Origin: Phaeosaccion multiseriatum | Taxonomy: Eukaryota; Protista; Ochrophyta, other classes | Direction: 5' to 3' | Length of the DNA: 64,000 bases | Assembly: GCA_965112735.1 (NCBI GenBank) | Contig: OZ218964.1 | Span: 496,001-560,000, forward strand | Part shown: piece after piece, positions 1 through 60,217 of the stretch | Position numbering within the stretch: the first letter of the stretch is position 1 | Layout of the letters: each line of letters opens with the position of its first letter | Translations under genes and position numbers: made by a program | Notes under the pieces: model-generated | The model's database searches: none | What the model was told of the DNA's origin: nothing | What the model saw: the letters and a program-made list of their open reading frames with translations, nothing else

Positions 1-3000
1 CGTGGAGGGCGAGCGTTACAGAATGGAGGTGGAGTGGGAGGTCATGCTCGACGCACTCACCACGTGCCCCACGCTGCAGCAGGAGGCGGCGGGGGGGGCA
101 TCGCTCTTGCTCACGGTCAGTACCCAGGGGGGGTCAGTACCCAGGGGGGGTCAGTACCCAGGGGGGGTCAGTACCCAGGGGGGTCAGTACCCAGGGGGAC
201 AGTGCGAGGGGTAGCGAGGGGTAGTGGGCTTGTTGGAGACAAGAGCGGACGGGGCCAACACACACCCACCCACCGAGAGAGAGAGAGAGAGAACTCCCCC
301 CCTTTGTTTGTTGTTTACCTAATGAACGTACGGACTGTTAAGACTGATAATCGATCGATCTGTCATGCGACTTGTGGGATGACAGGTGGCTGCAATGAAT
401 ACGCGGCGGATGCGAGCAAGCCAAGTCAAGGGCACACAGGGGGGGCAAGCAGCCATGGCCCGAGGAGCAATCGCCAGGGGGAGGGACAGATCAAGCGCTG
501 CCTTGTCGGGCCTCAGGAGCAAGAGCAACACCCCGGCCAGGAACAGAGGCAGAGGGGCCTCTGGATGGGGGGACGAGGGGGAGGGCGCCTTCTCCATGGG
601 CATTGGGGGGCGTTCTCCCTCTGTGTCGAGAGCGTCCACACCGAGGGGGGCGGCGTCCCCTTCAGCTTCAGCATCTCGAAGCTCACGCTCCACCAAAGGC
701 AGCTTCGGAGGGACGGCGGACGGAGCGGCAGGGGGGGGAGGGGGGGTATGGCATGAGACCTTCACCGTGACTAAGCGTGTGTCGGGAGACTACAGCCAGC
801 AAGGCCCCCTCAGACGCATGCACGTGTTGCTGACTTGTCTGGCGCAGGAGCGGGGCCTACAGGCAGTGGAGGTGCCTCCGGCGGCGCTGGGGGGGAGAGT
901 GCTGGACGGCTTGGGTAGGGGGCTTGGCGCGGGGGGGGAGGGGTATGGGTGTTATGGGGCGGGGAGCAGCGCGAGGGCAAAGGATTTGGTCTTCAATGGA
1001 TGGGAGTTCGCCTCGCCCTTCGCGGCTCGGGAAGACGGGAGGTGGGTGGAGGCGTATGGATGGGGAGGGACGGGGATGGCAGTTGACGGCAAGAAGGGCC
1101 GGGCCGTCAGCCTTCTCTCTCTCTTGTTCTCGCCTTCTTCGAGCCTCACTCACTCACCCCTCCCTCCTTCCTTCCTTCCCTCCCTCCCTGCCTGCCTGCC
1201 CGCTGTGTGCCCCTCCTCCCCCATGCGTCGCCACTCCTCCTCCGCACAGGGGCTCTCTCTCTCTCGGGCAGGACAGCCCCCGCAGCACCAGCCCCTCTCT
1301 GTGGGTGCTGCTGCGCTACCCCGTCCCCCCTGCGGCCCGGGCAGGAGCCTCAACCGTCTTGCACCGCCTCTCGGACTTGGCCTTCGAGATGGACGCGGTG
1401 TCATGGCAGGATGGGCCGTCTGATCCCAAGGGAGACAAGGGGCCAAGATGGTTCACGGCCTCGCATGTGTCCTTCTTGCAGGCGCCGAGAAAGGTGAGGC
1501 ATCGAGAATAGAATAGAGATGATCGATGTTGACTCTTCTTGTTCTGCTTGCAATGGTCTTTCCCCTTTGTTGGTGTTGGTGTTGGTGCTGGTGCTGGTGC
1601 CCCTTCTTACTCACCTCTCTCTCTCTGCATCTATCTCAGATCCGCAAGCTGCTGACTCTGTCGGAGCCGTGCCCAGGAGACAGCGCAAAGATGTCCGGTA
1701 TTAAGGAAGACCTTAGGGCGGGAAAGGTGAGTGGGGTGGGAGTGGGCATCCATGGCGCATCACAGATGGCGTATGGGGCTTAAGTCGGGCCATGTCGCGG
1801 TGCAACGCTTTCCATCACAGATGGCGGATGGTGTGCGCCTGTGCGCCGCTGCTCTCTCGCTCGCGCTTGTGTGTGTGTGTGTATGTGTATTCACGTGTCT
1901 GACGCCCGCCCTTGCGTGTGTGTGTGTGGGGGGGGGGGGGGTCCATTCGGTCCTTGGGCTTTGCTCTGCGCAGATGGCCGCCTCTGTTTTCCTCCGCTTT
2001 GAGACGGTGCTGCAGAACAACAATCGCGCCCCCCGGGGCATCACAGCGCCGTCTATGATGGAGCTGCCCCCCGCGGGAGGGGGCGCAGCAAGCGCAGCTC
2101 AAAGTCAGGCGGGGGGGGGGGGCAGAGTGTCGTCCGGCACACTCACTCGCCGCATCTTGGCCCACCGGGGGCGCTCCTCGACGGCGCACATGATCGGTGG
2201 AGGAGGGGGGGCAGCAGGAGGAGCAGCAGCTGGAGCAGCAGCAGCAGCAGGAGGAGGAGGAGGAGGGGGAGGAGGGGGGGGCGCAATGAAGGGCATGCTC
2301 CAGATGAAGCACAACATCAGCTCGAGCATCAGTACACACCTCAAAGCCTCCATGGACACACTCAGGCACGAGGGTGGACAGCACCCTCAGCCCCAACCGC
2401 AGCAGATACGGGAGGAGGAGGAGGAGGAGAAGGAGGTGGAGAAGAAGAAGGAGGAGGGGGAGGAGAAGAAGGAGGAGGGGGGGGAGGGGGGTGGCGTCAG
2501 GGGAGCAAGATTCGCATCGGACCCCGCTGCCCCGGCCTCGGCTCGTGCCCTACTCTCTACGAAAGAGCAGCCCGGCGAGGCTGAAGGCAGGCGCTCCTTC
2601 CGTCTGTCGGGCAGCAGCGACAAGGGCAGCAAGCAGGAGGCTCTCCCCCTCGTGACTCGGCGCGGCTCCATGTCCGATGTGAGCCTTCCCTGTCCTCCCT
2701 TGCCGGGGGCGTCGAGACCTGCCGTGCGCCACAGTGCGCTCTACGCCGGGGTGGCGCCTGTAGGAGAGGAAGGGAGGGCAGGGGGAGCCAGGGGGGCAGG
2801 GGGGGCAGGGGGGGCACCCGTCGATGCGCCGACTCCTCGCTCTCCTCCTTCTCGTCCGGCTTCTGCCTTCTCTCCTGGTGTGAGTGATGGTGTGGTTGTG
2901 GGCACTGGTGCTGGTGCTGGTGCTGGTGTTGGTACCGGTGCTCATGCTGATAGCAGCGCCTCTCCTCCCCTGTCCGGTGGCGTGCTGTCCCACCGCCACC

Positions 3001-3184
3001 TGGAGATGATGGAGAACATGTCCAGCGTGAGTGCCAACTCCACAGTCCTCACCGACCTGTCCTCCAGGCTGGACAACATTGAGGCGCTGTTGGGAAGGCT
3101 CTTAAGAGCGGGGGGCGGTGTAGGGGGCGGGGTAGGGGGCGGAGAGGGCCGTACCACTGACGCTCTCACAACAGCAGAGGGGCC

Positions 3185-3221
<37 letters not shown>

Positions 3222-4333
3222 CAATTGGTGATACAGCAGTCGCAACAGGACGAGGGGGGGGCGGGGAGGGAGGGGCAGCAGCCAACGCAGCAGCGCAGTG
3301 GCAGCAGTAGCAGCAGTGGCCTCTCTGGTGCCATCGGTCTTGGCCTGAGGACCAGCACGGCGCCCCAATGGGACCTTCAAAGAGGGGAGGACCAGACCCC
3401 GGGGGGGGAGCAGCTGCAGGAGCAGACCCCGCGGGGAGAGCTGCTGACATCGACCATGGCGGAGCTTCAGGTAGGAGGGGAGGGGAGGGGAGAAGGGGAG
3501 GGGCTCCGCTCCGTCTCTTGTGGAGGCTTTGTTGCTTTGCTCTCGTGGACCTGCTCTTGTCGTTTTCGTTGCGTGCTCATGCGTTGTGCTGCCTGCCCTT
3601 GTCGTATGCTGTCCCGTTGCACACAAAGCTCGTGAAGGAGGCTTTAAGAACCGAGCAACAGCAGCAGCAGCAGGGATGCCAACCTCCGCTTGAGGAGCAG
3701 CAAGGACAGCAAGGACAGCAAGGACAGCAAGACAAGTCTTTGCAGACAGGCGGGCCGCCCTACACGCTGCAGTCCTCGGCCGAAGGGGAGGAGCCGGGAG
3801 GTGATACAGCAGTTGGTGATACAGCAGAGGGAGGCACAATCTCCGCGGACAAGCAGCAGAAAAGCAGTGGGGGGCAGGAGGGGAGCTCGAGTCTGCCGAC
3901 TGGGAGGGCAGGCCGGAGCTCAGGAGAGCTCTCCCTGGCCTCCTCTGTCAGCAGCACGCTCTTCGCAGGCCTGAGCCGAAGTATAACGCGCACCAGCAGC
4001 TATCTCAGCCTTGGGGACAAGACCTCTGGCGGCGACTTGAGCAGAGCAAGTTTGCACAGCAGCGACGCGCAACTGTCGGGCAGTGGCGGTAGCAGTGGGA
4101 CAGGGGCAGAGACAGGGGGAGAGACAGGGGCTGGGACAGGGGCGGCAGCACCTGCCGTGAGGAGTGGGCCTCCCTCTGGTCCCTCCGGCCAGGGGGGCGG
4201 GGAGAAGCAAGCCGAGACAGAGATGGGACAACACGGCGGCTTGGGCGCTGGGGGAACTGACGCCCACAGAGAGGCTGACAGAGAGGAGGGCGAGCAGGCT
4301 CAAGGAGGGGACGGTACGGCTAACAAGAGTTGA
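1..4333 (+). CDS. 3' portion of a multi-exon gene, uncharacterised low-complexity (Gly/Gln/Glu-rich) protein; 5' end probably outside window
   Basis: GT-AG bounded segments join into plausible protein: ...ASTVLHRLSDLAFEMDAVSWQDG...QAPRK (to ~1492) | IRKLLTLSEPC...RAGK (~1640-1726) | MAASVFLRFETVLQNN... (~1974-3470) | LVKEALRTEQ...TANKS* (stop 4331-4333). No recognisable domain. Confidence 0.5.
113..198. repeat. Short tandem repeat (GTCAGTACCCAGGGGGG)x4-5
   Basis: Directly visible 17-18 bp unit with variable G-run, probably intronic. Confidence 0.85.
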
Positions 4334-48000: not shown

Positions 48001-49257
48001 TCACGAAGCCTTCTTTGGCGGGTCTATGCCTCGGTGGATCGAGAGCTGTTCAGGCATGGTCTTGGGAATCTCTGCGGGTTTCGTACCCTCTCCAGCCTTG
48101 ACGTAGACCTCCTCGTCCACAGGTCCCCAGACGTTGGTCTTCGACTCGTCTTCGAGTTCGATGCGGTACGGATTTCCATTGTCCCAGGTCTGGATCACCT
48201 TGCCCGGAGTATAGGCGCCCCCCACGTTTGCAAGCACTTTATCACCTACTTTGAATCGAAGCGTTTGCGAGCAGACGCAATCAAGGAAACCCTTGATGAG
48301 CGTGTCCTTATCGAGATCGCGACCGATGAAGACAAAGCAGTTTTCGCGCTCCTCACCGCTCCACGTAGCATCCGCAAAGCCACCTGCAAAGAGCATGCCT
48401 ACGCCCTGGAAAACAAACTTCTCATCCTTGCCAGCCACATTCAATACACCCTTGTACCGAAACAAGTCTGCGCCCATCGTCTGAATGATAGCGCCAATCC
48501 AGGACTGTAGCTTGTTGACGTTCAGGTGACCTGCAAACTTGACGCTGGTCGATGAAACTCGCGGATCGTGCTCGTGCTCCTGGTCGGTGTTGAGAAACTC
48601 TGGGTCCATCTCGAGAGTCTTCTTCACGTCGAATGCGCTGATGCCGATCAGTAGATTAGGATCAACCTTGCTCTGAAGCGTTCTCAAAATCTTCGCCTCG
48701 GTATTGTGCATACGCAAGCGCTTCTCAATAGCCTCAAGCTCTTTCTCATCGGTCACAAGATCCGTCTTGTTGAGCAGAATGCGGTCTGCAAACGCAACTT
48801 GTTCCTGGGCCTCGTTCTCAACGCCTTCGGGTTTCTCGTCGTCAAGGCGCGCGACAATGTGCTTCGCGTCAACGAGAGTGATGATGCCGTCCAACTTGTA
48901 GTGCTCCTGGATCCAGTCGTCGACGAAGAAAGTCTGTGCTACCGGAGCAGGGTCAGCCAGGCCAGTCGTCTCGATGATGACTGCGTCGAACTGTGAAACC
49001 TTGGACCACAAATTCTTAAGCGCCACGACCAAATCACCTCGTACGGTGCAGCAAATGCAGCCATTCATGACTTCGATGATCTCTTCCTCAGCATTTTCAG
49101 ACAGAATGCGCTCGTCCACACCGACTTCCCCAAACTCGTTCTCAATGATGGCGAAACGCAGACCGTGCGTCTTGTCTTCCAGAATATGGTTTAGGAGGGT
49201 TGTCTTACCCGCGCCAAGGAATCCAGTCAGGATAGTGACAGGCACTTGAGGTCTCAT
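48001..49257 (-). CDS. cobW: COG0523/CobW-family (G3E) metal-chaperone GTPase, intronless, with C-terminal extension
   Basis: PVTILTGFLGAGKTT, ENEFGEVGVD, NGCICCTVRGDL, IETTGLADPAPV, LLNKTDL, CobW_C (LFRYKGVL..FVFQGV..FVFIGR); extension LRFKVGDKVLANVG...; ATG at 49257. The symbol denotes the family, not proven orthology. Confidence 0.95.
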   Translation of the reverse strand: MRPQVPVTILTGFLGAGKTTLLNHILEDKTHGLRFAIIENEFGEVGVDERILSENAEEEIIEVMNGCICCTVRGDLVVALKNLWSKVSQFDAVIIETTGLADPAPVAQTFFVDDWIQEHYKLDGIITLVDAKHIVARLDDEKPEGVENEAQEQVAFADRILLNKTDLVTDEKELEAIEKRLRMHNTEAKILRTLQSKVDPNLLIGISAFDVKKTLEMDPEFLNTDQEHEHDPRVSSTSVKFAGHLNVNKLQSWIGAIIQTMGADLFRYKGVLNVAGKDEKFVFQGVGMLFAGGFADATWSGEERENCFVFIGRDLDKDTLIKGFLDCVCSQTLRFKVGDKVLANVGGAYTPGKVIQTWDNGNPYRIELEDESKTNVWGPVDEEVYVKAGEGTKPAEIPKTMPEQLSIHRGIDPPKKAS

Positions 49258-49953
49258 GCTTTTTGTTTTGTGTGAAGATCGGCAAGATCGTTTCACGTGC
49301 CACCACAAACCACTGCTGCAGTTTTTGATCGTTGTTTTTTTTTTTGCGTCAAGTTGGGCGCGTTGCGCGTTCTTGCGTGGGAGCGGTTCCGCGCCCGGAT
49401 GGGGTGGACATAAAACATAGAATATCGGGTGGGGGGCGGCCGGACGGACGGATGGGGAAGGAGGAAGATGCTCCTCGCGTTCACTGCGTCCCCCGACACC
49501 TAATATTACCTATATGCCTTCGTCTCAAGCGCTCTCTCTCTCAATCAATGAATACTTACACGTGTTTATTTTGTGTAAGGGGGGGTACATGCGATTTCCA
49601 GGGGGTGCCAAAGCAGGGCGGGCAGACGCGTCTGCCTCGCCCTTACTCCCATCCACCCCGTTGGATTCCCGATACTCCCACCAGTCCCCCCGGGCCGGGC
49701 GGGTGGGGAAACTTTTGCTGTCACTGCCGTCTCCTTCTACGCGGTGAACTGCTGGGCTGCCCCCTTCGCTGTCCTCCTCACCGCGCTGAGCTCTTCGGCA
49801 CTTGCTACAACTCTTGCGACGCTGGACTCGCGTCGCCTCGCTCCTCTTTGCACAGGAGTGATTGCTAAGTGCTGACTCCTTGTACCCCGGCGGGGTGAGC
49901 CTCGCCGTAGGCTGTTGGGCCTTCGCGTCAGTCCTTTTTCTCCTTTCATCTGC

Positions 49954-51258: not shown

Positions 51259-52494
51259 GGTAGAGGGGGAAGACAAAGCCACCGGCCCCGGTGTGGCCCT
51301 CGAACGTCAAACCTCCCACCCTCGCCGCTTGTCATCCGAGCTGCACAGGCCCATCAGCTATGTGCGCCAGCTAGGACACGGGAGTTGGGTGGGCTGCCGC
51401 ACAGGAGCGATACACACCTGATCGGCGAAGACAGCAAGACAGTGGGTAAAAATCGAGGGATGGAGGGACCCGGCAACTGCTCAGACCTCGAACATACCCC
51501 TTCCTCCCGCCCCCGTCGCTGTTCGATAGGACTCCACGCTAAGGAAGGACAGCGACCCACCCCGGGGCCTCCCCCTCTGCCAAGCAGTTCACCCACGCTC
51601 ACCTTCATTGAAGTTTCTGATTACTGTGACATCAATTTCGCTGGGGAAGAGCGAAGAGCGTGCAAAGAGCAAGCAGACGAGGAGTGTCACGAGTGTAAGA
51701 AAAGGACATATCGACGCAAGAATAGGCGAGATGGGAAGTTGCTGACGCACACCTGTAAAACATTGTCCCGATAGCATACTAAGCACGTTGGATAGGTCAC
51801 AGAATACAGTCTTCCACGGGGGTTTACACTGCACCTGCTCCTGTTCACAGGAGACACTCTGGACAACAACCTAAAACCTACCCTGTCGTAACACTACCGT
51901 ATAAAGCAGGGCAATGGCAGACACCTGGAACATATTCCCTCGCGTGAATACTTGCTTACGCGTTGGACATGTGCGATAAACTTATCCACAGGAAGTGTTC
52001 CCTTCATGAAGTTACAAGTCCTGCAACAAGAAACACATTGTCGTCATCATCATGATCTACACCGGTATATTGCTTACAGCTTTCGCGCTCCTCCTTTGAC
52101 CATCCACCACAGTAGTGACATGGAGCAGAGGTTATTCGTTGGAAGCTGCTCTTAGTGATGTGTACCTTTATCCCACGGCGCGCTGCTTGAGTCAGAAAAA
52201 CGCTCCATCGTTAACTTGAACTGAACTTGCGATTCACTACATATGTCTTGTACTTGAGGGTCTTCCGGTAGCGTCTCTTCTTCAAGGCAAGAGCGCGTTG
52301 GGGATCAAATGCCGTGGCTGAGACGGCCTCTTCGCAGGCAGCTTGCTCCAAAGGCCACTTACATTTTCCTGGAAGGTCACGTCCATTTGTGAGTAGGATT
52401 CAAAGCTCGCTCAGTTTGAGCTTGCTTGCCTTGTGTGCGTACTATATACACTAAGGCGAGCCGCTACCAGTGTTTGCGTATTACGAAGGCTACG

Positions 52495-55400
52495 ATGTCT
52501 AGCGTTCTCGAGGGACAGCGTAGCATACTCACGGCCTTCTTCCACGCCACGGGAGAACCCGACTGGCTTAAGAAAGCAGGATGGAACACGAAAGCACGTG
52601 TAGAAAACTGGGCCGGAGTGACGGTAGAGAATGACTATGTTGTGAAGCTCGATCTGCCGCAGAAAGGCCTCAAAGGTGAGAGAGACGTGATTATGGTTGT
52701 TCCGCCCGAGGTCCTGAAGAGTATTCTGAAGTATTTCCAGAATGTTCGGAAGTTCCCTCTCTGTTCATGCATCTAGATGTGATGGGTCTAGAATATTCGG
52801 GAAGGACGATCAAAGCGGGACAAGAGAAGGAGGCGCGGCACGGTGTGGCAGTCCAGCGACCGTTCGCGTCCTGTTCACTTGATAGTCGAATGACAAAGAA
52901 CTTTCCTCCGCTCCGCAGGGAATATTCCACCAGAGCTTAGGCGTCTGCAGAACCTGGTCGTGCTCAACCTGGAGTTCAACAACCTCAGCGGTAAGTGGTA
53001 CGCACACCCGTTCGCGTCCCTTTTACTTGATTTTTGCCTGACCAAAGAGCTTTCCTCCTCTACAGGGGACATTCCAAGAGAGCTCGGAGATCTCAAGCAG
53101 TTGGCCACTCTGTGTATCTCTACCAAGCTCTCCGGTGAGTGGTACGCGTACCCGTTCGCGTCGCGTCCCTTTGACTTGATGTAAGTATGACCAAGAACAT
53201 TCCTCCGCTCCGCAGGGAATATTCCGCCCGAGCTTGGAGCTCTGCAGAACCTTCAGGTTCTGTGGCTCGAGAACAACAAGCTCACTGGTGAGTGGTACGC
53301 GAACCCGTTCGCGTCCCCTTGCCTTGATATGAGTGTGACCAGAGAACTCTCCTCCCATCCGCAGGGAGCATTCCACCCGAGCTTGGAAGTCTGGAGAAGC
53401 TTGCGGTTTTGGGCCTCGACAGCAACAAGCTCACTGGTAAGTGGTACGCATACCCGTTCGCGTCCCTTTCGCTTGATATTTGTGTGACCACAGAACTTTG
53501 CTCCACTCGGCAGGGAGCATTCCGCCCACGCTTGGAGATGTGAAGCTCCATACCTTGCGACTCTCCAACAACCAGCTCATTGGTAAGTCGAGGTCCATGT
53601 CACTTGGTAATGGTATGAATGACCCAAGCACTTCCTTCCCCTCCGCAGGAGACATTCCACCTGCCCTTGAAGGGCTCTTAAAAGGCCAGCCCCATGGTAA
53701 GTCATACGCGTAGTCGCTCGCGTCCTTCCAGCCAGCAGCGTGTATGGACTGAGAAATTCGGCTCGGGACACCCTTCCTAATGCTCTCTTTCTTCCTTGTC
53801 TGAAGCTGTACGGCCAGGGCGAAGACGCGACGAGAAACAGTCGGGGGCGGCAATGGATGGTGATCACATCGACCGCGTGGATATGCTTGGCTACGGGGAC
53901 TACGGGGAGAGCATTGCCGATGCCGTACGCCAGGCCGTGCCTCCAGTGGCCGTGGGCATTTACGCGAAGTGGGGCTCAGGTACCTTAGCTAGCTACTGAC
54001 CCGCGCAGTTTGTAGAAAGAAATGCCCACTAGGTTGCCTGTCTCACCTTTCCTATCTGCAATCTACGCGATGCACAGGAAAGTCTTTTTTGCTCAGCAGC
54101 ATCAAGTCGAAGTTGCAGGGAAGCAAGACGGGGGGGGGGGAGGACTGGCTCATGCCCTGGTTGATCAGCTACCTATGGCAGGTGCTGCTTTGGTGCTTCT
54201 GTGGGTGCTTTGGACAGTGTTATAGTCGTGTGCTCGTCGAGGAGGGGCCTGACGAGGAAGAAGGAGTGGCGGAGACTGACTACTTAGTGGTGGAGTTCAA
54301 CGCATGCAAGTTGGTCGCACACCACACACGTGTACAATGGCGAAGAGCAGGGCCAACAGAAGGCCTCAGCCAAAGGCTGCATCCTCTTCTGACCACTTTT
54401 ACCACCGCTCCGGTCTCTCCACAGGGCTGTACGCGGGATCCGACAACCTGTGGGCCGGAGTTGTGAAGGTACGGCGCACGGTCAACCGGCCGAGTAGACA
54501 AGGGAGAAATTGAGTTAGCATGAGGGCTTGTCGTCGATAGTGCAAGCTCCATCGCTGTACAGAGCCCCTACCATGCACGCTGGAAGGGCATCCATGCATC
54601 GTAGGGCATCCCGCAACCTCTACCTGACAATTACCCCAACCCTGTACCTTTCTCCTCCTGCTCTCTCGCTTTCTTCGCTCGCTTGGTGACTGTGACGTGT
54701 CACTTTATCTCAGGCCATGTTCGACGAGGTGGAGAAGAGCAGCATGAGAGGAAACCGACGCGCACACAGAATCAAGAGGGCCGTAAAGAGCCAAGGCATG
54801 TACAACTTCCTGCTCCCACTGGGCATCTGCCTCCTTGTGGTGCTCATCGCGGTCACGGCGAGGAGGTCAATTGATAAAGGCCTAGCTACGAAACTGACGG
54901 TAGCCTTCGGGACTAGCTTACCGGTTGCTGCTGGACTAGTCGCGTGGTACAACATCGGCTGGGGTGTTCTGGGCCAAGGAGCAGCACTGTTGAAGGGGGC
55001 CAAAGATGCCAACTTCTCGAAGGAGCTCGGTAAGGGGGGGCTGCGTTTTACTTGTATGTCTATACCGCACTCACTGCCTCGCCTTGTTTCTTGGCCCAGG
55101 CTTCATGGCGAAGGTTAAAGAGGAGCTTGAGGACCTGTACGAGTTTCTTCGGAAGGAAGCAACTGTGCTGGCCGTCATGGTGGATGATCTCGACCGATGC
55201 AAACACTCGCAGGTGGTGAGCATTCTCGAAGCAGCGCAGCTTTTGCTGTGCATGGACAACGCTCCGGTGGCCTTGTTCCTTGCCGTGGACCCGAGAGTGG
55301 TGACTGCTGCGGTCGAGCATAGCTTTTGTGAGACCATGAGTCGTGCCAGGATCACAGGTAACGTCGCTCCCCATGCATGCATTCATGCTCTCTCCCTTCT

Positions 55401-57905
55401 CCTACGTTCATTTGTGTAATGTTCCGTGCTCGGTCCTATATATCTTCTTCCAACCTCAGGATACGAGTACCTGGAGAAGCTGATTCAGTAAGTCAAGGGC
55501 GACGACGGAGTGTTGTTTCTTTTGTTTTCGTTGTTGCTCGGAGTACCTCTTACGTCATGTCTGCCTGCCTGCCTGCCTGCCTGCCGGCCTGCCTGCCTAC
55601 CTGCCTGCGGTGGGCTGCTTGGCCATGACGCTCGCATCGATTGCTGGACCCAGGCTTCCGGTGAGTGAGTGAGTGAATGAGTGAGTGAGTGAGTAAGTGA
55701 TGGGCTGCTTTTGTCCACTGCCAAATTTTAAATCTCCCTACTAACCCTGTGTTTCGTCCTCTCGCTACTTACGTGTGCTTCAGTTTTGCTTGCCGGAAAT
55801 TAAGCTGGGCTACAAGAGAGGCTTGATGGACAGCATACTTCTTGGTGGGACACCGGAGGCCGTCATCGACAACTTGCTTGAGCTCTCCCTTGACGACGGG
55901 AGAAGATTGGCTTTGGAGAAGTGCGGTGTGCTCGAGATCGGTATCAAAGGTTACGATGGGTGGATCGCCTGGATGCGCTTGGGTGGAAACGCCGAGCATC
56001 CTGTTCCAGAGAATGGGAAGGAGAGGAGACAGATGCGCAAGGACCTTGTCGAGGCGTGGGTGAGCAAGCTCCTCAAAAGGGAGCCTGCTCTGGAGAGTGT
56101 TCCGCCGCAACTCGTCGACAATGCCATCAACGCGCTGGCAGAGCTGAGAAAGAAAGGAGACCGAAGGCCCCGGAAGGAGATCAACGCCGTTCGGAAGGAG
56201 AGCATGGCCCATCTCTGCGTCTTTGCCAACTGCTATATCTACCGTGTCACCCAACAGCAAGGCCATCAGCAGCAGGATGCAGCAGGACAGGAGGAGCAAA
56301 AGCAGCAGCAGCAGCAGCAGCAGCAGGATGTTGTTGCTGGTGGTGGTGGTCTTGGTGGAGACCAGCACCAGGAGCAGGACGAGCAAAAGCACGAGAAGAA
56401 GGGGGGGGGTGAAGTGGTCCCAAGCGAACCACCGCAGCAGCAGGCCAAGCAAGAGCAGGAGGAGAAGAAGCAAACTGCTCGTGCGACGAAGCAGCAAAAG
56501 GGGGTGGGTTGCAGGTGGAGAGGGCATAATACTTTCGACAGTTTCGTGGCCTTTATCGACAACAACCCCAGGAAGATGAAGCGCCTGGCCAATATCTACC
56601 GCGTCATGCGAGGCGTCGCGCTGAAGAGCAACGGCGACTGGGATTTTGAAGAGAAGGCCATCAAGTGGTGCATCTTGACAGAGCAGGTGTGTGCATAGCT
56701 ATGGTCCTCACCAGGCAACCTCTGTTGCTGCCGTCGCTGTTGCTGCCGTTTTGGTGACTACGACGGACAACTTTGTGCAGAGGCCAAGGGGTTGCCGGTC
56801 GTTTGCCCACGGAATCTGCTCTCTCTGTCCATATGCCTGCCTGCCTGCCTGTGCCTGTGCCAGTGGCCGTACCGAACGACGGTCATTGTGCACCTCGTGG
56901 AGGATTGCTTGCGACGTACGCACGCACAGAAAGGACGGGGCACTCCCACCCCGGGGCTGGGGGGAGGCGGACAGACGGAGACTCCGGCATGGTCTGTCTT
57001 CGACCCCCTTGTAAGCATGGAGGATGAGACGCAAGACATCAGGTGGGTCGGGTTGTGGTGATTCGCGTGCTTTCTGCCTTCCCCTTGCTTGTTTCCTGCC
57101 TCTGCTTCTCACCCTTGCTTGTTGCCTGCCTCTGCTTCTCACCCCGCCCTTTCCCGACCTTGTCGGCCAACCCCCTTGCTCTCCCGGCCTCCCCTTGCTT
57201 CTTTGCTTGTCTCGCCCCCCCCAAGTGACTTCGAGTTGATCATCGAGCAGGTCGTGCACGCCAATGAGAGTTCCGACAAACTGCTGCAATTGGACAGCGA
57301 TGCGGAGCTCTTTTGGGAACTTCTCAAGACCGGACCGAACATTTTAGTGGAAGATATCCGCGAGGGACCCCACACCGCGGGCAAACTTATGCAGCTCTGC
57401 TTCAACCTGAATCCGTCGCTGAAAGACATGGTGCGTACCCTATCTGCTAGGCACTGCTGTACTGAGTCCCTTCGATGATCAGATTCAGCTGCTACCCCCG
57501 CCCCCCCCTCTCATTCTTTCCCTCTCGCTTCCTCTCTCCCGCTCGCTCCTTGTACACCTCCCCCCCCCTCTCTCTCACACACCCCCCCCTGCTCTCTCCT
57601 GGCCTCGCTCTCTCCCTGCCCCATTCCTGTTTCCCTTCCCTCTTCTCTTTGCTGGCTGTGTAACTGACTGTCAGGTGGCTGGGGAGATGGAGCAGAAAGT
57701 CATCTGGCAGCACAGTAAGCATGCTGACGTGTCAAGATTTTTCAAGGAGCAAGAAAGCTTGCTTCATGCTCAGCCCCGAGAGAACATGATGACCTGGTTT
57801 CACCCGGCGCCTCATTTAGTCCCCGCTGCCACGGAAGGGATGCCCAGCGCCCGTCGGAGCTTATCGACAGGGGAACCGGCAGGGGGAAGAAGGCACTCAA
57901 GATAG
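52495..57905 (+). CDS. LRR + KAP-family P-loop NTPase (LRRNT cap, 5 full + 1 partial plant-type LRRs, KAP NTPase with inserted TM helices, Kidins220/NKPD1-like C-terminus)
   Basis: Exon 1 52495-52675 is an LRRNT-like cap (W..W.GV). LRR exons: 52919-52990, 53066-53134, 53216-53287, 53365-53436, 53514-53582, 53649-53696. KAP motifs: DMLGY..AVGIYAKWGSG|KSFLL (Walker A), VEFNA|WLYAGSDNLWAG, two hydrophobic helices (~54800-54970), VMVDDLDRC (Walker B), LFLAVDPRVV, GYEYLEKLIQLPFCLP, NPRKMKRL, KWCILTEQ|WPYR, LLQLDSDAELF, FNLNPSL. Confidence 0.9.
52858..53696 (+). repeat. Tandem array of ~150-bp intron+LRR-exon cassettes
   Basis: Introns share GTRAGTGGTACGC..ACCCGTTCGCGTC(CC)...CTTGAT...TGACCA.AGAACT.TCCTCC...CAG; each exon starts GG(A/G)..ATTCC and ends in phase 1. 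Confidence 0.92.
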
Positions 57906-58387
57906 CGGAAGAAGCATCACGGAGGAGGCGAAGACCAACGCGTGTACCTCTCTCCAAGAGTGTTGCCACAGTTTGGGCGGTGCGTGGAGGGAGGGAATGG
58001 AGGGAGCCAGCCCCGCCGCTGCGATGGCCAACAGGCCGTCTTCCTGAGCAGCGCGACTGGGCTTGGGCTGTCGCGTGGTCGCCCCTCCGTGTGTGAGAGA
58101 GGGGTAGAGATGAGGGGAGAGAGCGACGGTGAGGGAGAGAAGGAGAGGGAGAGGAAGGGGGCGAGAAAAGGGAGAGCGGCGAGCCACCCACCTCCTGCCT
58201 CCGTCCACCTCCTGTGCCTCTCCCTCCCCCCCCCCTTGTCTCCTGACTAGCTAAAAGAACACCTCTCATCACCACCCACCTCCTCACCCGCCTCAACCCC
58301 TTACCTGTCTCACGCACCCACCCACTCACCCACCCACTCACCCCGCCACCCACCCCCCGCCACCCCCCCCCCTCCACCCCTCTGCAG

Positions 58388-58980
58388 GACCTGGTACTTC
58401 TCTGGGAGGTGGTGCTGGAGGGGTGCAGCGGGTCAGGCAGGCGGGCTTTGCTGGCGACGACTCGCTGAGCCCCAAGAAGGCCAAGGAGCTGAGCCGCAAC
58501 AAGGCCAAGCTGGAAACTGCCCTCGCCATTACGCAGGACGATCTCAAGAAGTGAGTGACTTGTGGGTTTTTGGTTGTGGTGCCCATATAGCCTGCCCATG
58601 TGCCTGCCCATATAGGCCTGCCTGACTGGCCGACTGCCCGAGTCTGACTGCCTGAGTCTGTCTGCCTTGGCTGGCCTTGTACCTATACGTATGCATACCT
58701 TCACGTGCGAAAGAGAGGGTCGTCTTCTCGCCCGTCTTGTGCGTGTGTGTGAGCGTGCGTGCTCCCCTCTTATCTTTCTGCTTACTCACGCACGCACGCA
58801 CACTCACACACACGCACGCACAAACCGACCCTCTGTGGCCGCTGTGCTACTCCCCACCCCCATCCCATGCCCTCTGTCTGTCCTGAAGGTTCCTCACCTA
58901 CGTGAATAAGGTGCCCAAATCCAAGGAGGCGGGTGGGCCTTGCGACATTGAGCGGTTGGAGGCAGACCAGCTGAGCCTGT
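58388..58980 (+). pseudogene. Two orphan spliceable exon-like segments of an unidentified gene remnant
   Basis: CAG|..LSPKKAKELSRNKAKLETALAITQDDLK|GTGAGT and AAG|FLTYVNKVPKSK.. join in frame, but there is no start and they run into the orphan LRR cassette. Confidence 0.3.
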
Positions 58981-59005
58981 CGCCGGTGGAGGCAGACCAG
59001 CTGAG

Positions 59006-59256
59006 CCCGTTCGCGTCCCTTTGACTTGATTTTTGCATGATCAAAGAACGTTCTTCCATCTACAGGGAGTATTCCCCCCGAGCTTGGAAGTCTGAAGAAG
59101 CTTTGTACTGTAAAGAGTCACGTTGCTCTCCACCTGGGATACGAGTAGCCGCATGGATAAGGTAATAGCAACCCCAAAGCCAGCCTGGCAGCCAGCCTTG
59201 TCTCTATTAGCTTTATCCGTGAGCCATCCTAAACGACAACCTGCTGGGAGGTGAGT
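59006..59256 (+). pseudogene. Orphan LRR cassette (conserved intron 3' half + LRR exon) disrupted by a ~113-bp insertion
   Basis: CCCGTTCGCGTCCCTTTGACTTGAT...TACAG|GSIPPELGSLKKLCT (59066-59109), then insertion, then ILNDNLLG-G|GTGAGT (59226-59250). The 44 nt + one codon + 25 nt add up to 72 nt. Confidence 0.85.
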
Positions 59257-59494
59257 GAGAAACGGGCCACGCACCGTTCCTCACCGTATTTGCTTGGGCC
59301 TGGGCCATGGACATAATACTGACTTTCAACATCCCCGTCAGCCATCCCTGCACTTCTAACATCCCCCTGGACTAAACTATTGCGTGTCCCCACGCAACTC
59401 AAAGCGGGTTCGCCTACTAAAGCTCGACTTGTAGCAAAAGCCTCCATGTTGCTTCCAAAAAAAAAGGATGAGAAAATGACATTTTATCGTTCAT

Positions 59495-59530
59495 CGGGGT
59501 TAATTGACATACCGGGGTCAATTGACATAC
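59495..59530. promoter_or_regulatory. 18-bp direct repeat CGGGGT(T/C)AATTGACATAC x2 upstream of the DUF952 gene
   Basis: Seen ~65-100 bp 5' of ATG 59596; function inferred. Confidence 0.35.
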
Positions 59531-59595: not shown

Positions 59596-60217
59596 ATGGC
59601 GACAACTGCTCCTGCTCCCTTCATGTGAGATTGCGATGGCCTCCCCCTTCCTCCCTCCACTCCTCACTCCCTTCCTCACGCCCTCCCTGCCTCCCTCCCT
59701 CCCTCGCTCATTTTTTTTTTGCAGCTATCATCTGATCAAGGAGGACATGTGGACTCCCGTGAAGGAAGCCGCTGCTGCCTCATCAGAAGGTTCGGAAGAG
59801 CCGCTGCTGTACTTCCCCCCCACCTACAAGAGCGACGGCTTCGTGCATGCGACGGCTGAGCCCACAGCCCTTCTCGACGTGGCAAACCATTTCTATCAAG
59901 GAGATGCTGGCAAGTATCTCTGTCTGAAGATTGATGTTTCAAAGCTAAAGCACGAAGTCAAGTACGAGGCGGCGGCCCCAGTGGGGGACACGGAGGCCTT
60001 CGATAGCGCGAAGGAGCTGCAGGTGGAGGGCGCGAGTGAGCATGTGGTGGAGGAGATGAAGCTCGAGCCCATGTTGTTCCCTCACATCTACGGTGGGATT
60101 AACCCTGGCAGTGTTTGCGAGGAGCTTGTCGTGACGAGGGAAGGGGCGGAAAGCAAGAGCGGCAAGTTCCTCACCATCGACTTCTTTTCTCCTCACGGGG
60201 AAGTGCGGGCTGGGTAG
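59596..60217 (+). CDS. DUF952 family protein (2 exons: 59596-59624, 59725-60217)
   Basis: MATTAPAPF-I|YHL..W...Y.PPTY..DGFVHAT...VANHFY....LCLKID..KL..EVKYE...LFPHIYGGIN, a typical DUF952 pattern. Confidence 0.88.

What the first reader, a model, noticed from the sequence alone, without database searches (positions are those of the whole stretch)
52495..59256. Candidate exon-shuffling immune receptor: LRR-KAP NTPase with one-LRR-per-exon cassettes and a spare cassette outside the gene
Seen: an LRR sensor fused to a complete KAP-family P-loop NTPase (Walker A AKWGSGKS, Walker B VDDLDRC, TM hairpin, EKLIQLPF, EQWPYR). Each LRR is its own symmetric phase-1 exon (72/69/72/72/69 nt). Backbone residues (G.IP.ELG.L..L..L.L..N.L) are conserved while the solvent-exposed xLxLxx positions all differ (VLNLEF, TLCIST, VLWLEN, VLGLDS, TLRLSN). 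A further cassette sits ~1.1 kb past the stop. Established: brown-algal LRR-ROCO and NB-ARC-TPR genes have the same one-repeat-per-exon organisation and were proposed as shuffling pathogen receptors; prokaryotic KAP NTPases (e.g. PifA) act in phage exclusion. Inference: this is an NLR-like, membrane-anchored receptor that uses KAP rather than NB-ARC, NACHT or ROC as its switch and diversifies by cassette gain, loss and exchange.
Basis: partly seen in the sequence, partly recalled or inferred. Interest (0 to 1): 0.9.

Follow-up and report, generated by a model that had tools for sequence, protein, structure and literature searches.

The report
Exon-shuffled LRR-KAP NTPase gene
An algal gene joins a leucine-rich-repeat binding domain, built from one-repeat exons of a genome-wide cassette family, to a membrane-anchored KAP-type ATPase; I found no description of this receptor-like architecture, and its transcript and any immune role are untested.

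Summary
The sequence features are real. An 18-exon model (52495-57905, + strand) gives an intact 1051-aa protein. It has an LRR cap exon, five one-LRR exons (72/69/72/72/69 nt, all phase 1), a partial LRR exon, and a complete KAP P-loop NTPase with a transmembrane hairpin. The KAP part is colinear with a Chrysoparadoxa ANK-TPR-KAP protein (E 2e-111). It keeps 11 of 11 invariant family residues, including residues that depend on a GC-AG intron and a 7-nt micro-exon.

The LRR array is a 149-bp exon+intron tandem. Introns are 84% alike and the exon middles 49%. DNA runs of the same organism pile on the order of a hundred times single-copy depth (summed contig depth, not a copy count) on the one cassette stretch laid, so the cassette belongs to a genome-wide pool.

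The "spare cassette" is broken. It has an intron box and half an exon, then runs into a dispersed repeat and an in-frame stop.

No RNA data could be obtained, so the LRR-to-KAP splice is inferred. Immune function and cassette exchange at this locus are untested. No N-terminal LRR-KAP appeared among 183 KAP relatives or in the literature searched.

Verdict: a new variant of the known brown-alga-type exon-shuffled LRR receptors. The scan had already noted a second LRR-KAP gene elsewhere in this genome (s1-345982).

The parts
52495..52675 (+). Exon 1: start codon and LRR N-terminal cap; no signal-peptide-like hydrophobic start
   Evidence: Model. Atlas hit to an 'LRR N-terminal domain-containing protein' cluster, score 0.95. 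No Pfam LRRNT_2 hit. The ORF opens at 52426 after an in-frame stop.
52919..53582 (+). Five one-LRR exons (52919-52990, 53066-53134, 53216-53287, 53365-53436, 53514-53582; 72/69/72/72/69 nt, phase 1-1) separated by 75-81-nt homologous introns that carry the CCCGTTCGCGTCC box
   Evidence: Intron identity is 84%, against 49% for the exon middle.
53649..53696 (+). Exon 7: truncated LRR/linker (48 nt). Its donor and the first ~30 nt of intron 7 are still cassette-intron-like.
53806..54305 (+). Exons 8-9 (53806-53979, 54078-54305): start of the KAP domain, Walker A split across the junction, a Cys/Trp-rich hydrophobic insert, and FNA ahead of a GC-AG intron
   Evidence: M211 aligns with the N-terminus of many KAP-only homologues.
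54425..55029 (+). Exons 10-11 (54425-54468, 54714-55029): W-LYAGSDNLWAG motif and the transmembrane hairpin (residues 374-392 and 404-422)
55100..55357 (+). Exon 12: Walker B (VMVDDLDRC) and sensor region of the KAP NTPase
   Evidence: Pfam PF07693 E 8.5e-12. PADLOC QatA E 1.6e-7. Seven invariant family residues lie here.
55460..55660 (+). Exon 13 (55460-55487) and 7-nt micro-exon 14 (55654-55660), which together complete GYEYLEKLIQLP
   Evidence: Without the micro-exon the frame breaks. With it, Q544, P546 and F547 match near-invariant family columns.
55784..57905 (+). Exons 15-18 (55784-56686, 56864-57042, 57226-57430, 57675-57905): helical C-terminal part of the KAP module with a low-complexity Q/E-rich insert, the NPRKMKR, EQWPYR and LDSD..FW motifs, and the stop codon
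   Evidence: Colinear with P0001 to residue 996. The motifs are conserved in the 67-sequence alignment A3.
58952..59010 (+). 29-nt direct repeat (58952-58980 and 58982-59010) that abuts the orphan's intron box
59006..59103 (+). Orphan cassette fragment: intron box, branch/acceptor region and the first ~38 nt of an LRR exon (GSIPPELGSLKKL)
   Evidence: It is 72-77% identical to the in-gene cassettes. Contigs from elsewhere in the genome continue it as an intact cassette (table 5c).
59104..59266 (+). Dispersed high-copy repeat that replaces the rest of the orphan exon; it ends in an LRR-exon-end-like LNDNLLG plus GTGAGT
   Evidence: In run X1 the summed word depth at individual positions (59142-59201) is 89,000-208,000, against about 525 for single copy. 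Single unitigs reach depth 4,270-5,441 where single copy is about 100 (run X2).

Best explanation
This is most likely one protein-coding gene of an alga with brown-alga-type LRR genes. It encodes a cytosolic N-terminal LRR domain (a cap plus 5.5 repeats) fused to a KAP-family P-loop NTPase that is tethered to a membrane by a hairpin inserted between Walker A and Walker B.

Origin: the gene arose by exon shuffling. A tandem array of the genome's common 72-nt LRR exon + ~77-nt intron cassette was joined, within an intron, to the 5' end of a KAP gene of the eukaryotic KAP lineage. The sister gene in Chrysoparadoxa carries ANK-TPR repeats at the same position.

Proposed mechanism (inferred): the LRR surface binds a protein ligand on the cytosolic face. 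Binding releases the NTPase, and its ORC/Cdc6/STAND-like core (nearest solved fold: the ring-forming defence ATPase RdrA) binds or hydrolyses NTP and oligomerises at the membrane. That assembles or disassembles a membrane signalling complex, or perturbs the membrane.

Shown: anatomy, family membership, cassette homology, genome-wide cassette abundance. Inferred: a single transcript, ligand sensing, oligomerisation, and any role in immunity.
For: - An intact 3156-nt spliced ORF with canonical sites (one GC-AG intron).
- KAP_NTPase on exon 12.
- blastp against P0001 is colinear over residues 211-996, E 2e-111, and validates every KAP-part junction.
- 11/11 invariant and 27/29 near-invariant positions of a 67-sequence KAP alignment are kept, across exons 8-15.
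- A TM hairpin sits between the Walker motifs.
- Introns 1-9 are all phase 1. Exon 7 keeps a consensus donor followed by cassette-type intron sequence, so it is built to be spliced onward.
- Only 142 nt separate the read-through stop after exon 7 from the first Met of the KAP part. That leaves little room for two transcription units; the neighbouring genes are 1.7-3 kb away.
- Repeat-sensor-KAP fusions exist in relatives, including a transcriptome-derived TPR-KAP (P0136).
- In the tree the window and Chrysoparadoxa are sisters (SH-aLRT 96) inside a eukaryotic KAP clade.
- Cassette stretch 53300-53499 has summed depth 150-300 times single copy in four DNA runs.
- An AF2 model of the sister KAP matches RdrA at Z 17.4, ORC/Cdc6 at Z 14-15 and NRC2 NB-ARC at Z 11.5.
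Against: - No RNA evidence. All four runs that hold the locus are genomic DNA, and no RNA library was listed.
- The exon 7 to exon 8 junction has no comparative support. M211 aligns with the start Met of many KAP-only homologues, so a KAP-only product is possible.
- No N-terminal LRR-KAP was found among 183 fetched KAP relatives. The architecture is therefore corroborated only by an unchecked note of a second locus in this genome (s1-345982).
- The structure evidence comes from a homologue that is 42% identical in the core, not from the window's protein.
- Nothing in the window links the gene to defence. Its neighbours are CobW and DUF952 genes.
Confidence: 0.65

Rival explanations
1. There are two adjacent genes rather than a fusion. 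An LRR-only gene ends by read-through five codons into intron 7. A separate KAP gene starts at the ATG of M211 (about 53853) or uses an internal promoter.
For: M211 aligns with a near-invariant N-terminal Met column of KAP homologues. The 16 codons of exon 8 upstream of M211 are low-complexity and have no homology support. No RNA data exist. No N-terminal LRR-KAP was found in the databases.
Against: Only 142 nt would have to hold a 3'UTR, an intergenic promoter and a 5'UTR. Exon 7 has a consensus donor and exon 8 a polypyrimidine-AG acceptor in a compatible phase. The sister protein P0001 also has repeats directly upstream of the same Met.
Confidence: 0.2
2. The gene is a single LRR-KAP gene, but it is a housekeeping or developmental membrane scaffold in the manner of Kidins220/ARMS, not a pathogen sensor. 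Its LRR array merely shares the genome's generic way of building LRR domains.
For: The KAP core falls in the eukaryotic clade with Kidins220 and NKPD1, not with bacterial defence KAPs. The gene body is single copy and lies among ordinary genes, not in a receptor cluster. There are only 5.5 repeats, and no inverted or inactivated LRR exons in its introns. Zambounis et al. counted 46 non-ROCO, non-kinase Ectocarpus LRR loci with type I exons, so the exon type is not specific to candidate immune genes.
Against: Repeat-sensor + NTPase + membrane or effector architectures are typical of conflict systems. KAP relatives are fused to TIR, caspase and ROC-COR domains. Bacterial KAPs are experimentally antiphage (PMC13552941). 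The exon middle, which holds the exposed xLxLxx positions, is far more diverged than the introns (49% against 84%).
Confidence: 0.3
3. A programmed, possibly somatic, cassette-exchange system uses the downstream orphan as a donor to rewrite the LRR array.
For: The orphan starts exactly at the conserved intron box, next to a 29-nt direct repeat. The introns are homogenised.
Against: The orphan is broken and carries a stop. It is only 72-77% identical to any in-gene cassette. The contigs that cover 53441-59170 in four DNA runs are colinear with the assembly and have no variants (gaps only at three simple-repeat stretches the tool skipped), and the only joints come from other cassette loci. No recombinase or inverted cassettes are present in the window. 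An earlier follow-up on the same box elsewhere found no sign of a dedicated crossover signal (s1-331394).
Confidence: 0.03
4. The locus is a decaying pseudogene or an annotation mirage created by choosing splice sites to fit.
For: The model needs a 7-nt micro-exon and a GC donor. Two long G-runs lie in coding exons.
Against: The model has 1051 codons without a stop. Every unusual junction restores residues that are invariant or near-invariant in 67 homologues. The Walker A and B motifs are intact.
Confidence: 0.04

Closest known systems
Brown-algal LRR-ROCO genes with type I LRR exons (Zambounis et al. 2012, PMC3341825; PMC11378527)
   Same: One LRR per 72-nt exon, with the same split-Gly boundary (2+69+1 nt). 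Tandem exon+intron units, GxIPxxL...LxLxxNxL repeats, and inactivated LRR exons near the gene.
   Different: The switch domain is a TM-KAP NTPase, not ROC-COR. The array is short. No LRR exons lie in introns or on the opposite strand. 'KAP' occurs in neither paper.
Chrysoparadoxa australica ANK-TPR-KAP protein (P0001)
   Same: Sister KAP module: 42% identity in the core, colinear to the C-terminus, with the same motifs and TM inserts.
   Different: Its N-terminal sensor is ankyrin plus NPHP3/KLC-type TPR repeats instead of LRR.
Kidins220/ARMS and NKPD1 (animal KAP proteins)
   Same: Eukaryotic KAP clade. An N-terminal protein-interaction repeat domain followed by a membrane-embedded KAP NTPase.
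   Different: ANK rather than LRR repeats. Known as a neuronal signalling scaffold. No exon-cassette organisation is reported.
Prokaryotic KAP defence proteins (PifA, QatA, EF_KAP)
   Same: Same NTPase family. PADLOC QatA, PDC-S20 and PifA models hit exon 12 or P0001. Walker B-dependent antiphage activity has been shown for EF_KAP (PMC13552941).
   Different: They fall in a separate bacterial clade and have no LRR. Their effectors and operon partners are absent here.
NLR / STAND receptors (NB-ARC, NACHT)
   Same: Repeat sensor plus oligomerising P-loop switch. The sister model aligns to NRC2 NB-ARC at Z 11.5 and to ORC/Cdc6 at Z 14-15.
   Different: No STAND domain by Pfam. The sensor is N-terminal, not C-terminal. 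TM helices sit inside the NTPase. No CC, TIR, CARD or PYD effector domain.
KAP combined with NLR parts: amphioxus KAP-NACHT-LRR (P0075/P0076) and the Chromochloris NLR-like locus with a KAP domain (PMC7145615)
   Same: KAP and LRR in one predicted protein.
   Different: In those proteins KAP accompanies a bona fide NACHT/NB domain, and the amphioxus LRRs are C-terminal (Pfam LRR_6). Here KAP is the only NTPase.
RdrA of the RADAR antiphage system (8hr8, 8fnt)
   Same: Best structural match of the sister KAP model: Z 17.4, 346 residues aligned.
   Different: 12% sequence identity. RdrA is a soluble ring that pairs with a deaminase. The match was obtained on a homologue, not on the window's protein.

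Membership tests
KAP family P-loop NTPase (Pfam PF07693; Aravind et al. 2004) | Profile match above the curated threshold | tested here: met
   Exon 12 alone scores 45.4 bits (cut-off 20), E 8.5e-12. The spliced model against KAP proteins gives phmmer E 1e-114 to 1e-54. The whole spliced protein could not be handed to hmmscan.
KAP family P-loop NTPase (Pfam PF07693; Aravind et al. 2004) | Intact Walker A ([AG]xxxxGK[ST]) and Walker B (hhhhDD) | tested here: met
   AKWGSGKS at 248-255 and VMVDDLDR at 474-481.
KAP family P-loop NTPase (Pfam PF07693; Aravind et al. 2004) | Transmembrane helices associated with or inserted in the NTPase domain | tested here: met
   Hydropathy peaks at 374-392 (2.48) and 404-422 (1.43), between Walker A and B, plus a Cys/Trp-rich segment at 280-306. 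This is prediction only.
KAP family P-loop NTPase (Pfam PF07693; Aravind et al. 2004) | Family-invariant residues outside the Walker motifs (FNAW, DLDRC, D..R, GYEYL.K..Q.PF) | tested here: met
   11/11 invariant and 27/29 near-invariant columns of alignment A3 are kept.
Brown-alga-type exon-shuffled LRR genes (type I LRR exon) | Each LRR on its own ~72-nt exon, with symmetric phase and the boundary in the Gly codon before xIP | tested here: met
   72/69/72/72/69 nt, all phase 1-1. This matches the description in PMC3341825 and PMC11378527.
Brown-alga-type exon-shuffled LRR genes (type I LRR exon) | Signs of shuffling: homologous introns, related cassettes elsewhere, inactivated exons | tested here: met
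   149-bp tandem. Introns 84% alike. Summed depth 150-300 times single copy on the cassette stretch laid. One inactivated exon downstream. None in introns or on the minus strand.
Brown-alga-type exon-shuffled LRR genes (type I LRR exon) | Positive selection at solvent-exposed LRR positions; variation in repeat number between paralogues or strains | not testable with these tools
   No paralogue or strain sequences could be fetched. Only one sample's DNA runs were available.
ROCO GTPases | ROC-COR tandem | tested here: not met
   No Roc or COR hit on any exon. The NTPase is KAP.
NLR / STAND receptors | NB-ARC or NACHT STAND NTPase, followed by C-terminal repeats | tested here: not met
   Pfam finds KAP_NTPase only (a weak sub-threshold ATPase_2 hit, E 0.064). 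The repeats are N-terminal.
Prokaryotic KAP defence systems (PifA, QatABCD) | Closest phylogenetic affinity to the defence KAPs, with their partner genes | tested here: not met
   PADLOC QatA E 1.6e-7 shows family-level similarity only. The tree places the window in a eukaryotic clade separated from the bacterial clade (SH-aLRT 96). The eukaryotic context has no operon.
Single LRR-KAP transcript | RNA reads joining exon 7 to exon 8 | not testable with these tools
   Two run searches listed only four runs of one sample, and all are genomic DNA.

The most novel reading that the evidence does not exclude
LRR-KAP (with ANK-TPR-KAP in Chrysoparadoxa) could define a further class of eukaryotic repeat-sensor NTPase immune receptors, alongside NB-ARC, NACHT and ROCO types. 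Here the switch would be a membrane-embedded KAP ATPase, and the LRR sensor would be drawn from, and exchanged with, a genome-wide pool of one-repeat exon cassettes. On activation it would oligomerise at the membrane and trigger a PifA-like membrane or cell-death response.
Probability: 0.25. Interest if true: 0.8.

Novelty: new variant of a known kind. Interest (0 to 1): 0.55.

Why it matters
[quoted passage not shown] A KAP-based version would show that the same LRR cassette pool is plugged into quite different NTPase switches. It would also show that a conserved KAP chassis has swapped sensors (LRR here, ANK-TPR in a sister alga), which parallels NLR evolution.

KAP NTPases have only recently been shown to be antiphage in bacteria, and the function of eukaryotic KAPs outside Kidins220 is unknown. 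A membrane-embedded, LRR-bearing KAP gives a concrete gene on which to test whether this family acts in eukaryotic innate immunity.

Tried and rejected
- RNA support: two run searches and one read layout found only genomic DNA of one sample. No splice evidence could be obtained.
- The representative-library search with exon 15 gave one hit only, because that exon is poorly conserved. The window's own protein is not in the protein collections.
- Aligning separate exon translations to P0001 to build a mixed profile misaligned the fragments, so I dropped it.
- A metagenome scan with exon 12 found no relative.
- The CobW neighbour search did not identify the organism: the top hits were 73-75% identical and unnamed.
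- Pfam on single LRR exons is underpowered. The spliced protein has no reference, so it was not submitted to hmmscan, AlphaFold or the word-indexed search. A homologue was folded instead.
- Rfam on the orphan region gave nothing significant.
- The conserved intron shows no convincing RNA structure: -4.2 kcal/mol and one compensatory pair.
- The PDB sequence search found nothing. Foldseek on PDB found no match at E <= 0.001; only the VIA-align second look gave usable Z-scores.
- I considered and rejected bacterial contamination or recent HGT of the KAP. It is interrupted by 10 spliceosomal introns and sits in a eukaryotic clade.
Full report
**What is in the sequence.** The window is eukaryotic DNA with 53-65% G+C. 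Between 52495 and 57905 on the + strand, 18 exons with AG/GT borders (one GC donor) splice into an uninterrupted 3156-nt ORF of 1051 codons. Exon 1 encodes a 60-residue cap. Exons 2-6 are 72, 69, 72, 72 and 69 nt, and each is flanked by phase-1 introns. Each encodes one 23-24-residue repeat of the form G-x-I-P-x-x-L-G-x-L-x-x-L-x-x-L-x-L-x-x-N-x-L, with the Gly codon split 1+2 across the intron. Exon 7 (48 nt) is a truncated repeat.

**The LRR array is a DNA-level tandem.**
- Tandem Repeats Finder reports a 149-bp unit (2.7 copies, 81% matches) and a 297-bp double unit.
- The 13-nt intron box CCCGTTCGCGTCC occurs six times in 64 kb. The sites are the introns upstream of exons 2-6 and the downstream orphan. 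Chance expectation is 1.45, and no shuffle reached six.
- Among the four best-conserved units the introns are 84% identical. The exon's framework ends are 71-81% identical, and the exon middle, which holds the exposed xLxLxx positions, is only 49% identical. The introns are therefore better conserved than the coding sequence they separate.
- The intron shows no convincing RNA structure. Part of its conservation covers the donor, a TGAC branch-like site and the polypyrimidine tract of these very short introns.

**The cassette is a genome-wide family.**
- The only runs that hold the locus are four runs of one sample. Their contigs are colinear with the introns, so they are genomic DNA.
- The contigs that cover 53441-59170 match the assembly without a variant (gaps only at three simple-repeat stretches the tool skipped). 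Depth from 53700 to 58099 is mostly flat, about 525 in X1 and about 100 in X2.
- The bin 53300-53499 (intron 4, exon 5, intron 5) has summed depths of 154,502, 20,714, 7,399 and 18,508. That is 150-300 times the single-copy level. The excess is concentrated on intron positions (70,000-116,000 at 53342/53349 in X1), with less on the exon middle (2,600-4,200).
- The tool warns that summed depth is not a copy number. Even so, hundreds of distinct contigs at 90% identity or more map there (817 laid in X1).
- The bin holding exon 6, intron 6 and exon 7 is only about twice single copy, so that part is nearly unique.
- Earlier notes of this scan report the same box in cassettes of ROC-COR, XK-like and ZU5-type genes on another chromosome (s1-331315, s1-331394). 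I treat these as leads that agree.
- Within this window there are no further cassettes on either strand apart from the orphan.

**The KAP part.**
- Pfam KAP_NTPase hits the Walker B exon alone at E 8.5e-12 (45.4 bits, cut-off 20). It also hits the Walker A exon weakly, at profile positions 3-31.
- An exhaustive HMMER search with exon 15 found a single relative, P0001. P0001 is a 1371-aa Chrysoparadoxa australica protein with ANK repeats, NPHP3/KLC-type TPRs and a KAP domain.
- The spliced model aligns colinearly to P0001 from residue 211 to 996 (E 2e-111). The alignment crosses every KAP-part junction.
- It supports the GC-AG intron (FNA|W|LYAG), the 7-nt micro-exon (LIQ|LP|FCLP) and the TEQ|WPYR junction.
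- In a 67-sequence alignment of KAP relatives, all 11 invariant and 27 of 29 near-invariant positions are kept in the window's protein.
- Hydropathy shows a strong hairpin (374-392 and 404-422) between FNAW and Walker B. A Cys/Trp-rich hydrophobic insert follows Walker A, and P0001 has hydrophobic segments at corresponding places.
- Both Walker motifs must lie on the same side of the membrane, and exon 1 has no signal-peptide-like start. The LRR domain is therefore predicted to be cytosolic. This would be a membrane-tethered intracellular sensor, not a surface receptor.

**Where the KAP comes from, and what relatives carry.**
- Two word-indexed searches with P0001 returned 183 KAP proteins. 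Their N- or C-terminal partners include ANK, TPR, PH, SPRY, WD40, pentapeptide, ROC-COR, TIR, caspase and kinase domains.
- The only ones with LRRs are two amphioxus models, and these are KAP-NACHT-LRR with C-terminal LRRs (Pfam LRR_6).
- None has an N-terminal plant-type LRR. The searches were length-limited and capped, so absence is not proven.
- A quick ML tree of the core places the window as sister to Chrysoparadoxa (SH-aLRT 96). Both fall in a eukaryotic clade with other ochrophyte KAPs and animal Kidins220/NKPD1, separated from the bacterial clade (96). Branches are long, and only one support measure was computed.
- The KAP is thus an old eukaryotic module whose sensor has been swapped. 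It is not a recent bacterial import.
- PADLOC models of QatA, PDC-S20 and PifA match at family level.

**Fold of the module (by proxy).** The spliced protein has no reference, so I folded P0001:396-1340 with the 67-row alignment. Mean pLDDT was 72, and above 90 in the NTPase core and the C-terminal helical domain. Foldseek on PDB found nothing at E <= 0.001. The VIA-align second look gave:
- RdrA of the RADAR defence system at Z 17.4 (346 residues);
- archaeal ORC/Cdc6 at Z 14-15;
- BrxC at about Z 12;
- the NB-ARC of plant NRC2/NRC1 at about Z 11.5.

This fits an ORC/Cdc6/STAND-like, ring-forming ATPase. That is the basis for proposing NTP-dependent oligomerisation, but it is an inference from a homologue.

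**The weak link is the LRR-to-KAP junction.** No RNA library was listed, so one transcript is not shown.

In favour of the fusion:
- Exon 7 ends in a consensus donor, followed by about 30 nt that are still recognisably cassette intron.
- Exon 8 has a pyrimidine-rich acceptor in the matching phase.
- If exon 7 were not spliced, the frame would stop five codons later, only 142 nt upstream of the first Met of the KAP part. The neighbouring genes are 1.7-3 kb away.
- The sister protein also has repeats immediately upstream of the same Met.
- A transcriptome-derived TPR-KAP exists (P0136).

Against:
- That Met aligns with the N-terminus of many KAP-only homologues.
- The 16 codons before it have no homology support.

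I put the single-gene reading at roughly 0.75-0.8, and the whole best explanation at 0.65.

**The "spare cassette".**
- At 59006 the intron box reappears, followed by the branch/acceptor region and an exon start encoding GSIPPELGSLKKL.
- After about 59103 the similarity to cassettes ends. The frame runs into a stop after 26 codons.
- The sequence from about 59104 to at least 59266 matches a dispersed repeat. Summed depth at individual positions is 89,000-208,000 in X1, and single unitigs reach 40-50 times single copy in X2.
- Contigs from elsewhere continue the orphan's first half as an intact cassette (table 5c).
- The orphan is only 72-77% identical to any in-gene cassette, no closer than those are to each other. 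It is therefore a decayed member of the genomic pool, not a recent copy or a ready donor.
- It is preceded by a 29-nt direct repeat whose second copy merges into the box. That suggests a junction formed at microhomology.
- In Zambounis's terms it is an "inactivated exon" lying outside the gene.

**Literature.**
- Zambounis et al. 2012 describe the 72-nt type I LRR exon in Ectocarpus ROCO genes. They also count 46 of 164 other LRR loci with such exons.
- The 2024 ROCO paper describes the same 2+69+1 layout.
- Neither paper, nor the Phaeoexplorer genome paper, mentions KAP NTPases.
- No paper in the library combines KAP NTPase with algae.
- KAP proteins are described as membrane-bound P-loop ATPases that often carry repeats. 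PifA is a T7-exclusion factor (PMC13001434). Several KAPs have been shown experimentally to be Walker B-dependent antiphage proteins (PMC13552941).
- A Chromochloris NLR-like locus with a KAP domain was reported by Andolfo et al. (PMC7145615).

**Verdict.** This is a new domain combination within a known kind of system, the exon-shuffled LRR receptor-like genes of brown algae and relatives. The scan has already noted a second LRR-KAP gene elsewhere in this genome (s1-345982, unchecked).

Noticed in passing
window 55561-55700: The 7-nt micro-exon (55654-55660) sits between a (CTGC)12 microsatellite in intron 13 and a (GTGA)10 microsatellite that begins at its own donor GT. Such a small exon flanked by simple repeats is unusual and worth checking in RNA.
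   Followed up: partly
window 54306-54424: Intron 9 uses a GC-AG donor (GCAAGT). The split codon restores the family-invariant Trp of FNAW.
   Followed up: yes
window 59104-59299 (possibly further right): A dispersed repeat of unknown type, with summed depth hundreds of times single copy in the DNA runs. It contains an LRR-exon-end-like LNDNLLG plus GTGAGT. It has no other copy in this window and no Rfam match.
   Followed up: partly
window 58388-58552 and 58889-59023: Two ORF-like segments with AG/GT borders and no Pfam hit lie between the stop and the orphan. They would join in frame to a possible donor (CACA|GTAAGC) near 57714 inside exon 18, so they may be alternative 3' exons or a small separate gene. 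The second one reads into the orphan's intron box.
   Followed up: partly
window 54133-54142 and about 56404-56412: G10 and G9 homopolymers lie inside coding exons 9 and 15. The frame is intact in the assembly and the contigs agree, but these are error-prone sites.
   Followed up: partly
window 48004-49308 (-) and 59597-60217 (+): The neighbours are a CobW/ZNG1-type G3E GTPase (Pfam E 2e-62) and a two-exon DUF952 gene (E 8.5e-14). They are ordinary genes, not a receptor cluster.
   Followed up: yes
window 59495-59530: An 18-nt tandem (CGGGGTCAATTGACATAC, 2 copies) lies just upstream of the DUF952 gene. Its meaning is unknown.
   Followed up: no
proteins P0002, P0003, P0007, P0119, P0120 (metagenomic): ROC-COR GTPase fused to a KAP NTPase in one protein: two different NTPase switches together. 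They cluster with Anaerolineae KAPs in the tree.
   Followed up: no
proteins P0075, P0076 (Branchiostoma lanceolatum): KAP (55-631), NACHT (847-1004) and LRR (1361-1654) in one gene model. This is either a KAP-headed NLR or two genes merged by annotation.
   Followed up: partly
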